This document shows positions 21,382 to 26,928 of a stretch of DNA of 64,000 bases, one piece after another. The first letter of the stretch is position 1, and each line of letters starts with the position of its first letter. The notes beneath the pieces were generated by a model. The model saw only the letters and a list, made by a program, of their open reading frames with translations, was not told the DNA's origin and did not search any database. Both the position numbers and the translations under genes were made by a program. Location: assembly GCA_033442325.1 (NCBI GenBank), contig JAWQFM010000001.1:1734138-1798137 (forward strand). Reading direction: 5' to 3'. The stretch comes from Salpingoeca rosetta (Eukaryota; Protista; Choanoflagellata).

Positions 21382-22941
<1,560 letters not shown>

Positions 22942-23788
22942 CACGCTGGCAACCTGCAGCCGCATGCAAAACAAGTAAACATCGCAAGGTCATCAAGTGG
23001 ACTGTGAGGAAGCATGCAGCAGGTGAAGATGCATGTGTGTACAAAAGGCATGCATGCGTACAAAAGGCATGCTCAGCACAGCGGACTAAACTTGAAACAG
23101 TGGCTGGCTGGACGCTGCATGTGTCCAATGTGTGCAATGTGTGGTCTGTGTCTGTGTGTGTGTCTCACACACCATCACGACAGCTGCTGTTCATAGTACC
23201 TCGATGGATGGATGGATTGGATGGATTGCCGGTTTCTGCCACTGCAATACAGTAGTCGAAAATCTATTGAAATTTAAACAAATTTTCATAGGTATCACAG
23301 CCACATTTCCGTCTGTCGTGTCTTTGTAAAGCGACACCACAAAATAGTATATTGAAACCATTCGTGAATATTCGTGAGGACCACCTTTGTCTTTTTTGTT
23401 TGGCTTGTTGCCGCTTGGCGCCCGTGCGTGCCCCTTTGGGAAGCGAAGTTGCGCACACATTTTGCGCTGTCTCCGGCACCCCGCGTCATCTCGCCTTATC
23501 AGAGGTGCTGACCACCTGCGCGAATGACTTGCTCGTTGCGTTGCGGCTGTGGGTGTGCTGTGGGTGTGCTTGTCGTGCGGCGAGAGCGCGCATACAAACC
23601 CAAACAAACCAGGGCCTCGTTTTGCTGCTGCATGCATGCGTCGTTCCTCCCTCACGTCAGTCGGTCATTAACATCGTCGTCGCCGCCATCACCAACTTGC
23701 TTGTCATTGTATTGTCGCATTTACAGCACAACAACTTCCGGTCTTCTTCTTCGTTTGCTGCTCCACTATCCAGAAGAACAACGCAGAC

Positions 23789-24689
23789 ATGTCCAAGGTG
23801 TTCCACCTCAACCTCAGCACCTGCGGCCTTGGCTTCACCATCGCCGGTGGTGTCGACGCCCCTCTGGAGGATGGTATGTTTGTTTTCTCCTGTGTCTATG
23901 TGTGTGTGTGTGCATGTGTGCGTATGTATGTGTGTATGTATGTATGTGTGTGTGCGTGTGTGTCTGTGTGTGCGTGTGCGTGTGCGTGTGCATCCGCCCT
24001 CACGCGTAAGCACACGTGCACTCGCCCCCAACTCACCCGCACGCCCTTCTCTCTCAACTCTCTCAGGTTCGACGGCCATTGTGGTTCGCGACATCCACGA
24101 GTGTGGCGCTGCACGCAAGGCCGGCCTCCATGTTGGCGACAAGCTCATCTCCGTCAACCACAAGCCGCTTGTCAACGTCACTCACCAGGATGCTGTTGAG
24201 CTCATCAAGGACGCCATCCCTTCCCAGGTGCGCACATTCACGCCGTGTATGTGTGTGTGTGTGTGTGTGCTCTGTGTCACGTTGTTTCTTGGCTTGTTTC
24301 CTGCTTCGTTTTCCAAGAACACACTCACACACGCATCCAACTCCCTCTCCACTCCCTGTCCACTTCCCTCCCCTCTCTCGTCAATACGCTCGTTAGCACG
24401 TGACGCTTGAGGTGGATCGCGCAAACATGATGTCTGACGTCACCGTGGACAAGGGCGACGGCGCAGCGGCCGACCGCCTGACCCTTGCTCGCAAGGCCTT
24501 TGAGGCGCATGACCCCGAGCTGTCTCGCCTGGCCCACGAGCTTGGCGCAGCGCCAGAGCGTCACCAGACCGAAGCCGGCCAGTACGTCAAGGCTGCTGTG
24601 TTTGGTGGCATGGATGGCATTGTCACCACGTTTGCCGTCGTCGCCTCTGTCAACGGTGCCGACCTCGCAACTGGCGTCGTCATCATCAT

Positions 24690-24749
<60 letters not shown>

Positions 24750-25502
24750 TTGTGCCTTTGCGCGCGCGTGTGTTTGCTTGCTTGCATGCTTGTTCGCATG
24801 CATGCTTGTTCGCTGGCTTTTGTGTTCGTCTCCACCCCAAACCTCAGTCCCCAATTTCTTTCTTACCTCACACCTCGATCCCAACTCCTCGCACCCACCC
24901 AACACCGCACGCCAGGGCTTTGCCAACCTGATTGCTGACGGCATCTCCATGGGCATGGGCGAGTTCATGAGCGCCCTGTCCGAGTCCCAGTACACTCTCT
25001 CGGAGCGCGTGCGCGAGGAGTGGGAGTTTGACCACAACCCGGAAGGCGAGATCAAGGAGATGGTGGACCTGTACATGGAGAAGGGCTTCTCCGAGGAGGA
25101 GGCGACACAGATTATGACCATCATGGCAAAGCACCGCGAATTCTTCATTGACCACATGATGGTGGAGGAGCTCGGTCTGATGCCACCGGACGAAGGCGAA
25201 TCCCCCGCAAAGAACGGCCTCGTCATGTTCCTCTCCTTTGTCGCCTTTGGCCTCGTCCCTCTCCTTTGTAAGTGCTGACACACAATTCGTGCATGCGTGA
25301 GCCGGGCGTGCCGCGTTTCGCCTGCGCCTGCTGCATGTGCACTATTCCAATCTGGAGTGCCGTCTCGTTCTCTCCCCCAACTACACAGAATGTGCTTTCG
25401 TTTCCCTCACTTTTCACCACCCTCTTCTCTATTCTCACCTGCCATCCTTGCCTCCTCATTTCACGTGGTGTCTGTGCGCCTGTGTGTGTGTGTGTGTGTG
25501 CG

Positions 25503-25561
<59 letters not shown>

Positions 25562-26097
25562 CGTACCTTGCCCTCAGCACCGTCGACTTTGGCAGCAACA
25601 AGAGCGACGCCCTGTTTGGCATTGCCTGCGCCATGACCGCTGTTGCCCTGTTCATCCTCGGTGCTGTCAAGAGCCGCTTCTCCACCCAGTCCTGGTACAT
25701 GTCGGGCTTCTCCGTCGTCATCAACGGCGCCGTCTCCGCTGGCGCCGCCTACCTCGTCGGCCTCGGGTGCGTATCTTGGGCCATCTCTGCATGCTTTCGC
25801 GTCAATGCACTCTGCTGTGCTTGGTTTTTTTTTTTTTTTGCGCGCGCGTGTGATTGTGTTGTAATTTTATGTGTGTGTGTGTGTGTTTACGTGCGTTGCT
25901 TGTATGAACGTGAGGAAACGTTTCTGTGTGTGCTTTTGTTTGCCGATGTGCACATGCACGCATCACAAACTAGTGAGCACGTGTTTTTCTTGAACGTGAA
26001 CCAATGCTAACGTCCCGTCTCCCCTCACCGCCTCACAACCTTGCCACCATGCATCTTCAGTCTTGAGAACCTCGTGAGCTTGAACGATTGCCCATGA
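23789..26097 (+). CDS. PDZ domain fused to VIT1/CCC1 vacuolar Fe/Mn transporter
   Basis: Exons 23789-23873, 24067-24227, 24397-24690, 24916-25267, 25562-25766, 26061-26097. PDZ: GLGFTIAGG..GAARKAGLHVGDKLISVN..VTHQDAVELIK..VTLEV. VIT1: VFGGMDGIVTTFAVV, GFANLIADGISMGMGEF, ERVREEWE, MMVEELGL, FGLVPLL. Confidence 0.9.
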
Positions 26098-26928
26098 GCG
26101 AAGCAATGCCCCAACGTCAACCGTGCATCCATATCCACATTGCTTTTGGTTTCCCCTTTCGCTTACATCTCAGCCAGACCCTGTTTCCTTGAATTTTTTT
26201 TTTTTTTTTGGTTTTGGCCCCCATTTCTTCCTGACTCTCCTTTATTCTGGAACCTTTTCTTGTTTGAACTGCCCCTTGATGTTTGTCTTTGTGCCACTCC
26301 TCTTGATGCGTGGGCATGCACCCACCCACCCAATACATGCACATCGTTTCCCTTTGTCTCCCTCAGTCTTCTTTTCCTGTTTTGTATTATGAAAAGTAAC
26401 AACCACACTTCGTCCATCTGTCGTTTGGCTGTTTGTTGGTTGGGTGCTTGTTCTCCCAACTGTGCTGTGTGCTGCGTTGTGTGCTCAGTTTTGGTTTATC
26501 GAGACAGGAGCACGCAAGCCCTTGTTCCAACCGTGCGCACGGAACACACCCTCACGAATTACACAGCAACACACGATATCACTCGCAGGGCAAAGAGAAA
26601 AGGAAGCGAACCAAACTGTGAAGAAGGAACAAAGAAAGAACACGTGCGAAGAGAGAAACGAGCATGAAAACACACACGCACACACACACACACACACACA
26701 CAACCTATCATCAAGCAATGTGCAGAAAGCAAAACCAAAAAGGAGGAGAGGTTTGGGTGGACGAGTTGATGACAAACGACAACAAACCGACAACAGGCCA
26801 CAGTTGAAAATGATGCGATGGCGAGCGCACACCAGCCTTGGCACAAACGCGAGTGTCAACATGACACAACACCACTCCCCTCCCCTCTTCCAAAATGCGG
26901 CACAACCATGTTCAGCGCGTGCGGCACA

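What the first reader, a model, noticed from the sequence alone, without database searches (positions are those of the whole stretch)
23789..26097. PDZ domain fused to a VIT1/CCC1 iron/manganese transporter
The last PDZ strand (HVTLEVDR, from 24397) is in the same exon and frame as the VIT1 N-terminus and TM1, so this is not a mis-join of two genes. VIT1/CCC1 transporters are known from fungi, plants, protists and prokaryotes and normally lack such a domain. A PDZ could tether metal transport to vacuole or phagosome partners in a bacterivore (inference). It is head-to-head with the Sec-GPx, pairing iron sequestration with peroxide defence.
Basis: partly seen in the sequence, partly recalled or inferred. 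Interest (0 to 1): 0.75.

Follow-up and report, generated by a model that had tools for sequence, protein, structure and literature searches.

The report
PDZ domain fused to iron transporter
This choanoflagellate gene really makes one protein that joins a PDZ protein-docking domain to a VIT1/CCC1 vacuolar iron/manganese transporter; the fusion is transcribed, conserved in several choanoflagellates and already in public gene models, but nobody seems to have remarked on it or tested it.

Summary
A six-coding-exon gene (ATG 23789, stop 26097, + strand) encodes 377 aa: a canonical class-I PDZ (residues 1-91), a variable linker, then a complete VIT1/CCC1 transporter. Raw stranded RNA reads and RNA contigs from three further studies join every coding exon. 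Two single contigs run from exon 1 to exon 6. No transcript start shows in intron 2 or exon 3, and the spliced 5'UTR has no upstream ATG.

The product is identical to the public Salpingoeca rosetta protein XP_004998958.1 (UniProt F2TWE3), "vacuolar iron family transporter", so the model is not new. The genome's only other VIT1 gene (XP_004989180.1) carries the same PDZ and shares both intron positions that could be compared. PDZ-VIT1 also occurs in Hartaetosiga (two species), Microstomoeca, Barroeca, Salpingoeca infusionum and nine unnamed or environmental sequences. The two acanthoecid VIT1s found, and one from a filasterean, lack it.

The PDZ is under constraint: 45% mean identity against 14% in the linker, with the GLGF loop and alphaB1 His kept. 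By VIT1 topology it faces the cytosol.

My best reading is a partner-docking or targeting module on an iron-sequestering antiporter; that part is inferred. The proposed functional pairing with the neighbouring GPx has no support. No paper I could search mentions the fusion. The scan also flagged the paralogue elsewhere in this genome.

The parts
23473..23504 (+). 5'UTR first exon (start approximate)
   Evidence: Read ends pile up at 23473. A joint 23502>23725 (cut +2, GT..AG) is seen in 41 raw RNA reads and in the X9 contig. It holds no ATG.
23505..23726 (+). 5'UTR intron, retained in about a tenth of reads
   Evidence: Joint. Depth is about 11 inside against about 120 in exon 1. The X8 contig starts unspliced at 23615. 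The retained form carries upstream ATGs, read from the sequence.
23727..23873 (+). Exon 1: rest of the 5'UTR, then ATG at 23789 and PDZ residues 1-28 (GLGF loop), phase-1 end
   Evidence: The translation equals P0001 residues 1-28.
24067..24227 (+). Exon 2: PDZ core, residues 29-82
   Evidence: Pfam PDZ E 9.8e-12. Joints at both ends in raw reads and three contig sets.
24397..24690 (+). Exon 3: last PDZ strand (83-91), variable linker (92-107), VIT1 N-terminal helices and TM1 (108-180)
   Evidence: There is no read depth in intron 2 and no depth step inside this exon.
24916..25267 (+). Exon 4: TM2, the cytosolic glutamate-rich metal-binding domain and the start of TM3 (residues 181-298)
   Evidence: Pfam VIT1 E 1.8e-37, profile positions 37-153. 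The exon 3-4 junction is shown by 27 loose-end reads and by the X8 and X9 contigs.
25562..25766 (+). Exon 5: TM3 end to TM5 (residues 298-366)
   Evidence: Pfam VIT1 E 1.2e-11, profile positions 160-213. 101 loose-end reads match its start, and the contigs cover it.
26061..26576 (+). Exon 6: last 11 codons, stop at 26095-26097, then 3'UTR to a poly(A) site near 26576
   Evidence: Joint 25766>26061 in 543 reads. A poly(A) loose end follows 26576 in 32 reads. Translation checked.
23789..24423 (+). PDZ domain coding span (residues 1-91, interrupted by introns 1 and 2)
   Evidence: Model pLDDT is about 85. TM-score is 0.92 and rmsd 1.4 A to human DLG1 PDZ2, at 41-43% identity. phmmer against PDB gives DLG4, DLG1, SYNJ2BP and Scribble PDZs at E 1e-20 to 1e-8.
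24472..26094 (+). VIT1/CCC1 transporter coding span (residues 108-377, interrupted by introns 3-5)
   Evidence: phmmer to EgVIT1 6IU3, E 3.8e-25 over residues 138-364. Foldseek to 6IU3/6IU4 gives target TM-score 0.68. The model has five TM helices plus three cytosolic helices.

Best explanation
Shown: the locus is one expressed Salpingoeca rosetta gene. Its 377-aa product has an N-terminal canonical PDZ domain, a poorly conserved linker of about 16 residues, and a complete five-helix VIT1/CCC1 transporter with its cytosolic glutamate-rich metal-binding domain. The fusion is old. Both VIT1 genes of this genome carry it, with the same intron before the last PDZ strand, and so do several other choanoflagellates. 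The PDZ peptide-binding residues are conserved.

Inferred from family knowledge: the VIT1 part works as a dimeric Fe2+ (possibly Mn2+)/H+ antiporter that moves cytosolic metal into an acidic endomembrane compartment. Two membrane passes separate the N-terminus from the cytosolic metal-binding domain, so the PDZ sits on the cytosolic face. A dimer would display two PDZ domains.

Inferred mechanism: the PDZ is of class I (GLGF loop, His at alphaB1). It docks the C-terminal S/T-x-hydrophobic tail of a cytosolic or membrane partner. This would fix where the transporter resides, or which protein it is coupled to: targeting or retention in a particular vacuole or food-vacuole membrane, or assembly with another component of iron handling. 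It is the animal arrangement of a PDZ scaffold binding a transporter's tail, but with the PDZ built into the transporter itself. The partner and the compartment are unknown.
For: The gene is real.
- Pfam domains are colinear.
- Every coding junction is seen in RNA, and two contigs span exon 1 to exon 6.
- The first ATG of the spliced mRNA is the PDZ start.
- The product is identical to public protein P0001.

The fusion is conserved.
- 16 PDZ+VIT1 proteins head two searches at 590-670 bits for the full-length ones, against 502 or less for PDZ-less relatives. The truncated Barroeca model scores 486.
- The genome has only two VIT1 loci, both fused.
- The paralogue shares the intron before the last PDZ strand and the one at the TM1/TM2 turn, after residue 180.
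- An AU test does not reject a single clade holding all PDZ-bearing copies (p 0.36).

The PDZ looks functional.
- Mean pairwise identity is 45%, against 14% in the linker.
- The G-L/V-G-F loop is kept in all 15 sequences that cover it, and the alphaB1 His in 15 of 16.
- The fold matches DLG1 PDZ2 at TM-score 0.92.
- The in-frame Met93/Met94 after the PDZ is not conserved in orthologues.

The transporter looks intact.
- The equivalents of EgVIT1 Asp43, Gly44, Gly69 and Met80, the acidic residues of the metal-binding domain and Met149/150 are invariant. Their roles are taken from PMC7714665.
- The homodimer model scores 0.53 against a best control of 0.00. Runs agree in at least 85% of contacts and partner pLDDT is 74. 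That mark was reached by 21 of 30 proteins solved as pairs and 0 of 23 solved as single chains. TM1, TM2 and the metal-binding helices form the interface. The result may come from memory of 6IU3.

Context.
- Topology (N-terminus cytosolic, C-terminus luminal) is stated in PMC7714665.
- No ferritin Pfam match appears in the genome, so VIT-type sequestration may be the main iron buffer.
- Leon et al. 2025 report both paralogues expressed, as vit1 and vit2.
Against: There is no experimental or computational evidence for any PDZ ligand, for the compartment, or for transport.

EgVIT1 Glu72, implicated in metal and proton movement, is Asn184 here. An invariant Asp188 lies one helical turn further on, so coupling may differ from the plant protein.

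Read depth is 2-4 times higher on exons 4-6 than on exons 1-3. I read this as 3' bias, but a minor internal transcript is not excluded.

Microstomoeca roanoka has a close PDZ-less paralogue with a complete ORF (P0007), and the two acanthoecid VIT1s found lack the PDZ. The PDZ is therefore dispensable for VIT1 function as such.

The inter-domain geometry of the model is uncertain (pTM 0.48, linker pLDDT below 50).
Confidence: 0.6

Rival explanations
1. The PDZ acts in cis as a regulatory lid. Instead of recruiting another protein, it binds a segment of the transporter's own cytosolic face (the metal-binding domain or the conserved pre-TM1 helices, in its own or the partner protomer) and gates or senses metal loading.
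For: The PDZ and the metal-binding domain are on the same side of the membrane (topology from PMC7714665; model). The pre-TM1 helices next to the PDZ are conserved at 54% mean identity, with invariant Arg109, Asp121, Ser125, His129, Glu136 and His138. The dimer would bring two PDZs close to two metal-binding domains.
Against: The pre-TM1 motif is also present in PDZ-less relatives (P0007 and P0014), so it did not co-evolve with the PDZ. The protein's own C-terminus is luminal and cannot reach the groove. The linker varies in length from about 16 to about 110 residues (P0010), which fits a flexible tether better than a fixed lid. The conserved residues are those of the canonical C-terminal-peptide groove.
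Confidence: 0.15
2. The PDZ directs the transporter to a non-storage membrane (plasma-membrane domain, contractile vacuole, Golgi or ER). The protein would then serve metal efflux or detoxification rather than vacuolar storage.
For: The closest PDZ relatives (DLG, Scribble) are cortical polarity scaffolds. VIT1 homologues are not always vacuolar: Plasmodium VIT is mainly in the ER and bacterial homologues are exporters (PMC7714665). The Glu72 to Asn change hints at altered coupling.
Against: H+ antiport as in EgVIT1 needs an acidic trans side, which seawater does not provide. The genome shows no ferritin match, so some intracellular store is expected. Leon et al. place Vit1/2 at vacuoles, but only by homology. 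Nothing here addresses localisation directly.
Confidence: 0.2
3. The fusion is an artefact or a neutral relic. Either two genes were merged by annotation or read-through, or the PDZ is a decaying passenger with no function.
For: Domain shuffling is frequent in choanoflagellates. One species has a PDZ-less close paralogue (P0007).
Against: Every junction is supported by RNA from four studies. The last PDZ strand and TM1 share one exon, and there is no transcription start between the domains. The fusion is kept in both paralogues and across genera, with binding-site residues invariant and a PDZ-to-linker identity contrast of 45% to 14%.
Confidence: 0.04

Closest known systems
EgVIT1 / AtVIT1 / yeast Ccc1 (VIT1/CCC1 family, PDB 6IU3/6IU4)
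   Same: Five TM helices with a three-helix glutamate-rich cytosolic metal-binding domain between TM2 and TM3. The equivalents of Asp43, Gly44, Gly69, Met80 and Met149/150 are kept. A dimer is predicted with TM1 and TM2 at the interface.
   Different: It carries an N-terminal PDZ domain. Glu72 is replaced by Asn, with an invariant Asp four residues later, and Pro48 is replaced by Thr. Identity to EgVIT1 is 26%; the VIT1 part is closer (about 50%) to short prokaryote-type and protist VIT1s.
MbfA-type erythrin-VIT1 fusions of proteobacteria
   Same: A soluble cytosolic accessory domain is fused to the N-terminus of a VIT1 transporter (PMC7714665). This shows that the family tolerates N-terminal domain accretion.
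   Different: The accessory domain there is a di-iron ferritin-like ferroxidase that acts on the substrate. Here it is a protein-protein interaction module with no metal chemistry.
SYNJ2BP / OMP25 (single PDZ anchored in the mitochondrial outer membrane)
   Same: A lone class-I PDZ is held on the cytosolic face of an organelle membrane by a transmembrane segment of the same chain. Its PDZ is among the best sequence and fold matches (E 1.3e-10, 38% identity). That it recruits cytosolic partners to the organelle is from my own knowledge.
   Different: SYNJ2BP has only a tail anchor and no transport function. The domain order is the same, but the membrane part is unrelated.
PDZ scaffolds that bind transporter tails in trans (NHERF1, PDZK1 with URAT1 or CFTR)
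   Same: PDZ-mediated positioning and coupling of membrane transporters; for example PDZK1-URAT1 (bioRxiv 10.1101/2025.07.21.665923, listed).
   Different: There the transporter supplies the C-terminal motif and the PDZ is on a separate soluble scaffold. Here the transporter carries the PDZ and an unknown partner must supply the tail.
DLG/PSD-95 PDZ1-2 and Scribble PDZ domains, including Monosiga brevicollis Dlg PDZ2 (6X1P)
   Same: GLGF loop, alphaB1 His, same fold (TM-score 0.86-0.92), 33-43% identity.
   Different: Those PDZs sit in multi-PDZ cytosolic scaffolds (MAGUK, LAP), not in a polytopic membrane protein.

Membership tests
VIT1/CCC1 transporters (Pfam PF01988) | Significant match to the family profile over its whole length | tested here: met
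   Exons 3, 4 and 5 match profile positions 1-35, 37-153 and 160-213. Exon 4 alone scores 129.7 bits against a cut-off of 28.1. phmmer to EgVIT1 gives E 3.8e-25.
VIT1/CCC1 transporters (Pfam PF01988) | Five TM helices with a cytosolic three-helix metal-binding domain between TM2 and TM3 | tested here: met
   The AF2 model has helices 152-170, 174-220, 222-235, 240-251, 254-266, 277-302, 308-335 and 342-370. Foldseek to 6IU3/6IU4 gives target TM-score 0.68.
VIT1/CCC1 transporters (Pfam PF01988) | Pathway residues Asp43, Gly44 and Met80 (EgVIT1 numbering), described as near-universal in PMC7714665 | tested here: met
   Asp155, Gly156 and Met192 align to them and are invariant in all 16 fusion proteins.
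VIT1/CCC1 transporters (Pfam PF01988) | Glu72 of TM2, implicated in metal and proton movement in EgVIT1 | tested here: not met
   It aligns to Asn184, which is invariant. An invariant Asp188 lies one turn further on. The review reports that several EgVIT1 pathway residues (Asp43, Pro48, Tyr175) are absent from some VIT1 groups, so I do not treat the Glu72 change as excluding membership. It is a real difference in the pathway.
VIT1/CCC1 transporters (Pfam PF01988) | Homodimer with TM1 and TM2 lining the pathway | tested here: inconclusive
   The complex model scores 0.53 against a best control of 0.00. Runs agree in at least 85% of contacts and pLDDT is 74. The mark was reached by 21 of 30 proteins solved as pairs and 0 of 23 solved as single chains. 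The interface includes residues 151-209 and 233-269. A solved relative exists, so the pass may be from memory.
VIT1/CCC1 transporters (Pfam PF01988) | Fe2+/Mn2+ transport coupled to H+ | not testable with these tools
   Needs yeast ccc1 complementation or proteoliposome assays.
PDZ domain (Pfam PF00595), class I | Significant match to the PDZ profile and the PDZ fold | tested here: met
   Exon 2 alone gives E 9.8e-12, 45.5 bits against a cut-off of 23.2. The model matches DLG1 PDZ2 at TM-score 0.92 and rmsd 1.4 A.
PDZ domain (Pfam PF00595), class I | Carboxylate-binding loop (G-L-G-F type) | tested here: met
   Residues 13-16 are GLGF. Across the fusion proteins the loop reads G-[LV]-G-[FLA] in all 15 sequences that cover it.
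PDZ domain (Pfam PF00595), class I | His at the first position of helix alphaB, which selects Ser/Thr at ligand position -2 (established PDZ knowledge) | tested here: met
   His68 is kept in 15 of 16 fusion proteins; P0012 has Tyr.
PDZ domain (Pfam PF00595), class I | Binding of a C-terminal peptide | not testable with these tools
   No ligand is known. Needs peptide display or pull-down.

The most novel reading that the evidence does not exclude
PDZ-VIT1 is a choanoflagellate-specific invention in which the cell's only iron-sequestering transporters are wired, through a built-in class-I PDZ, to a defined partner on a defined membrane, for example the maturing food vacuole. Iron released from digested bacteria would then be captured at its source. 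This would be PDZ-based transporter positioning, a hallmark of animal epithelia and synapses, working in cis on an organellar transporter that animals later lost.
Probability: 0.25. Interest if true: 0.65.

Novelty: new variant of a known kind. Interest (0 to 1): 0.45.

Why it matters
VIT1/CCC1 transporters are the main iron-detoxifying store of fungi, plants and many protists, and animals lack them (PMC7714665). Choanoflagellates are the sister group of animals. In S. rosetta both VIT1 copies carry an animal-style PDZ domain, and the genome gave no ferritin match. That gives a concrete handle on how a phagotroph places its iron store. It is also a rare natural case of a PDZ built into a polytopic transporter rather than onto a separate scaffold.

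S. rosetta is genetically tractable and its iron physiology is already under study (Leon et al. 2025, who named the genes vit1 and vit2 without noting the PDZ). Localisation, a PDZ-deletion allele and ligand identification are therefore directly feasible.

The finding is a lead, not a surprise of the first order. Domain shuffling is common in this lineage, and the gene model is already public.

Tried and rejected
- Frame slip. My first Pfam call failed because I mis-set the frame of exon 2 by one base. I corrected it.
- PDZ-only word search. Searching with residues 1-100 of P0001 found only P0001 and P0004. The 5-mer index is too coarse for this domain, so it says nothing about where the PDZ came from.
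- ESM Atlas. The search by features gave no usable hit. By structure it returned only a VIT1 cluster and DLG clusters, and no PDZ+VIT1 cluster. Clusters under 50 members are invisible there, so this says nothing about novelty.
- First tree. It lost most PDZ-less rows to an over-strict motif filter of mine. I redid it.
- GPx co-location.
  - The six-frame Pfam GSHPx scan of the genome did not even list the window's own GPx, so it cannot exclude a GPx near the paralogue.
  - I therefore read the paralogue's upstream 8 kb directly and found a guanylate cyclase.
- Literature. The supplements of Leon et al. hold no vit1/vit2 identifiers, so I cannot say whether this gene is their vit1 or their thecate-induced vit2. 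The two Monosiga PDZ catalogue papers do not mention an iron transporter.
- Promoter scan. The bacterial promoter/terminator scan is irrelevant to a eukaryote and is ignored.
- Not run: the exhaustive representative search.
  - It returns only the 150 best scores without domain content.
  - Multi-PDZ animal proteins and the many close VIT1-only proteins would fill that list, so it could not establish absence of PDZ+VIT1 elsewhere. The operators also flagged its cost.
- Not done: joining the exons into a spliced protein myself. The identical database protein P0001 stood in for the spliced product.
Full report
**What is in the sequence**

The region is eukaryotic, with (GT)n-rich introns. Translating the open stretches in frame gives six coding exons on the + strand:
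- exon 1: 23727-23873, with the ATG at 23789
- exon 2: 24067-24227
- exon 3: 24397-24690
- exon 4: 24916-25267
- exon 5: 25562-25766
- exon 6: 26061-26097, ending in the stop

This is 1134 coding bases, or 377 codons. All five coding introns are GT..AG.

Pfam, run exon by exon by reference, puts PDZ (PF00595) in exon 2 at E 9.8e-12. It puts VIT1 (PF01988) in exons 3, 4 and 5 at profile positions 1-35, 37-153 and 160-213, in that order. Exon 3 begins with the last PDZ strand and runs on through a linker into the VIT1 N-terminal helices and TM1.

The spliced product is represented by the database protein P0001. Each exon's whole-codon translation is an exact substring of it, at residues 1-28, 30-82, 83-180, 181-297, 299-365 and 367-377.

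**Is it transcribed as one unit?**

I laid four runs on window 23100-26700 (3,601 letters): one stranded raw-read RNA run and Logan contigs from three other studies.
- Introns 1, 2 and 5 are reported as GT..AG joints in the raw reads (35, 70 and 543 reads) and in all three contig sets.
- Introns 3 and 4 border (GT)n repeats, and the tool dropped their joints. Loose-end consensus sequences at 24915 (27 reads) and 25267 (101 reads) spell the end of exon 3 and the start of exon 5.
- Single contigs of 1445 nt (X8) and 1535 nt (X9) run from exon 1 to exon 6 with exactly the expected offsets.

Depth inside intron 2 is essentially nil once the exon parts of those bins are discounted, and there is no depth step within exon 3. 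I see no transcript that starts between the PDZ and the transporter.

A 5'UTR exon (about 23473-23504) is spliced to 23727. Neither UTR piece contains an ATG, so the first ATG of the main mRNA is the PDZ start. About a tenth of reads retain the 5'UTR intron, which carries upstream ATGs. A poly(A) tail begins after 26576.

Depth rises 2-4 fold from exons 1-3 to exons 4-6. I read that as 3' bias. A transcript starting in intron 3 would lack TM1 and is unlikely to matter, but I cannot exclude one.

**Whose gene is it, and is the model known?**

A word-index protein search used the stop-free stretch 24400-25275, which reads through intron 3. It returned P0001: 377 aa, named by NCBI and UniProt "vacuolar iron family transporter [Salpingoeca rosetta]", with precomputed Pfam domains PDZ and VIT1. 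Its accessions are XP_004998958.1, EGD72389.1 and F2TWE3. The public gene model therefore already contains the fusion.

A six-frame Pfam scan of the whole assembly (55.4 Mb) finds VIT1 at only two places: this locus and one on contig 31. The second encodes P0010 (477 aa; XP_004989180.1, F2UP56), which also has PDZ and VIT1. Mapping P0010 back onto its locus shows the same intron before the last PDZ strand and the same intron after residue 180 at the TM1/TM2 turn. The fusion therefore predates the duplication.

The scan's own notes flag the paralogue independently (s1-438758 and s1-440519).

**How far does the fusion reach?**

Two searches gave the same 16 PDZ+VIT1 proteins: the single-sequence search and a profile search with an alignment of the 16 fusion proteins. 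In the profile search the 15 full-length fusions score 590-670 bits, and PDZ-less relatives start at 502. The truncated Barroeca model scores 486.

Named sources, besides S. rosetta with two copies, are Hartaetosiga gracilis, H. balthica, Microstomoeca roanoka, Barroeca monosierra (a truncated model) and Salpingoeca infusionum. One transcriptome protein (P0012) has no species label. The rest are environmental.

PDZ-less relatives are:
- the acanthoecids Didymoeca costata and Stephanoeca diplocostata, both with complete ORFs
- the filasterean Pigoraptor
- every more distant eukaryotic and prokaryotic hit

In a maximum-likelihood tree of the VIT1 part, all choanoflagellate sequences form one clade (100/98) that is sister to Pigoraptor (99/87). 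Inside that clade the PDZ-bearing groups and the PDZ-less acanthoecid group meet at an unresolved node. An AU test does not reject a single clade holding all PDZ-bearing copies plus two nested PDZ-less ones (p 0.36).

So one origin is compatible with the data. Whether it lies at the base of all choanoflagellates (with loss in acanthoecids) or within craspedids is open. M. roanoka has a PDZ-less copy (P0007) that is sister to its own PDZ copy (96/88), which points to a secondary loss or a different first exon.

The two listings show only the best 120 of capped candidate sets. "Absent elsewhere" is therefore an observation on near relatives, not a proof.

**Are both halves in working order?**

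PDZ:
- Mean pairwise identity among the fusion proteins is 45%, against 14% for the linker.
- The carboxylate-binding loop (GLGF at 13-16), Gly20/Gly21, the Gly-Ala-Ala and Ala-Gly-Leu turns, Gly52/Asp53 and His68 at the start of helix alphaB are invariant or nearly so.
- The AlphaFold model gives the PDZ a pLDDT of about 85.
- Foldseek matches it to human DLG1 PDZ2 at TM-score 0.92, rmsd 1.4 A and 41-43% identity. It also matches Scribble, SYNJ2BP and Monosiga Dlg PDZ2. phmmer against PDB agrees.
- By established PDZ rules, the alphaB1 His makes it a class-I domain that prefers S/T-x-hydrophobic C-termini.

VIT1:
- The alignment to EgVIT1 (6IU3), read with the review's residue list, shows the equivalents of Asp43/Gly44 (Asp155/Gly156), Gly69 (Gly181), Met80 (Met192), the acidic residues of the metal-binding domain and Met149/150 (Met261/262). 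All are invariant in the fusion clade.
- Glu72 is Asn184, with an invariant Asp188 one turn later. Pro48 is Thr160.
- The model has five TM helices and three cytosolic helices.
- A two-copy model of residues 108-377 scores 0.53 against 0.00 for the best of three controls. The runs agree in at least 85% of contacts and pLDDT is 74. The mark was reached by 21 of 30 proteins solved as pairs and 0 of 23 solved as single chains. The interface is TM1, TM2 and the metal-binding helices. Because 6IU3 is solved, this shows likeness rather than independent proof.

**Topology and mechanism**

The review states that the VIT1 N-terminus is cytosolic and the C-terminus luminal. This also follows from the two membrane passes between the N-terminus and the cytosolic metal-binding domain. 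The PDZ therefore faces the cytosol, beside the metal-entry side, and cannot reach the protein's own luminal tail. A dimer would present two PDZs.

The linker is unconserved and ranges from about 16 residues to about 110 in the paralogue. That fits a flexible tether.

I therefore favour a partner-docking or targeting role (confidence about 0.6 for the whole statement, and much higher for the gene itself). The rivals are a cis-regulatory lid, targeting to a non-storage membrane, and a functionless relic. Nothing here identifies a ligand or a compartment.

The genome gave no ferritin Pfam match (six-frame search, so short exons could hide one). This fits VIT-type sequestration as the main iron buffer.

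**The GPx neighbour**

The selenoprotein GPx lies on the opposite strand at 21382-22941 (note s1-440316; the ORF with the GPx N-terminal motif is). Its start is about 530 bp from the VIT 5'UTR exon. That is head-to-head adjacency and no more.

The paralogous PDZ-VIT1 gene has a soluble guanylate cyclase (HNOB, HNOBA, cyclase) upstream on the same strand. I have no co-expression data.

**Literature**

Full-text searches gave the following:
- PDZ with "vacuolar iron transporter": 0 papers.
- PDZ with VIT1: 4 unrelated papers.
- PDZ with CCC1: 5 papers, of which the 4 listed are unrelated.

Leon et al. 2025 (PMC11934334) name the two S. rosetta genes vit1 and vit2. They report both expressed, with vit2 4.4-fold higher in thecate cells, and place them at vacuoles by homology. 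They never mention a PDZ.

The family review (PMC7714665) lists N-terminal erythrin, basic, P/S-rich and Cys-rich elements but no PDZ. It also states that animals lack the family.

**Verdict**

It is not a discovery of a new gene, because the model is public. It is an unremarked variant of a known transporter family with a plausible but untested mechanism.

Interest is moderate (0.45). Novelty class: new variant of a known kind.

Noticed in passing
L006:1846-4628 (G000 contig 31, 754.8-757.6 kb, minus strand): Directly upstream of the paralogous PDZ-VIT1 gene lies a soluble guanylate cyclase: HNOB and HNOBA (E 1e-27 and 4e-57) followed by a cyclase catalytic domain (E 1e-52). It is on the same strand as the VIT1 paralogue.
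   Followed up: partly
window 24691-24745, 25478-25558, 23886-24001, 24239-24281: Nearly every intron of this gene carries a long (GT)n microsatellite. Intron 3 starts with it directly at the donor, and intron 4 ends with it just before the acceptor. The read tool had to skip these stretches. Whether such repeats affect splice-site choice here is unknown.
   Followed up: no
whole assembly G000: A six-frame Pfam scan finds no ferritin (PF00210) in the genome, while all 14 control genomes score. If true, this organism would resemble fungi (VIT store, no ferritin) rather than animals. Short exons could hide a gene.
   Followed up: partly
window 23505-23726: About a tenth of the RNA reads retain the 5'UTR intron, and one study's contig starts inside it at 23615. 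That form carries upstream ATGs that overlap the main start out of frame, which could be a translational brake.
   Followed up: no
window 24915-26600: RNA depth on exons 4-6 and the 3'UTR is 2-4 times that on exons 1-3 in the raw-read run, and about 1.5 times in one contig set. This is probably 3' bias, but a minor internal start in intron 3 was not excluded. One low-depth contig covers 24757-24944 unspliced.
   Followed up: partly
P0007 against P0004 (Microstomoeca roanoka transcriptome): The same species has a PDZ-VIT1 and a closely related complete VIT1 with an unrelated 40-residue N-terminus and no PDZ. They are sister in the tree (96/88). This is a natural with-and-without pair for comparison.
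   Followed up: partly
P0009 and P0017 (JGI metagenome proteins): Two environmental PDZ-VIT1 proteins are named 'DNA damage-binding protein 1' by their source. That looks like an annotation error.
   Followed up: no
C-termini of the fusion proteins (alignment A1, columns 490-515): The luminal tail keeps a Cys four to a dozen residues from the end. In several orthologues it is followed by a Thr-rich stretch ending in Ala-Pro. This may be a luminal modification or disulfide site.
   Followed up: no
whole assembly G000: The six-frame GSHPx scan listed three other GPx loci (contigs 26, 17 and 9) but missed the window's own Sec-GPx. The contig 17 locus has an in-frame TGA and may be a second selenoprotein GPx.
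   Followed up: no
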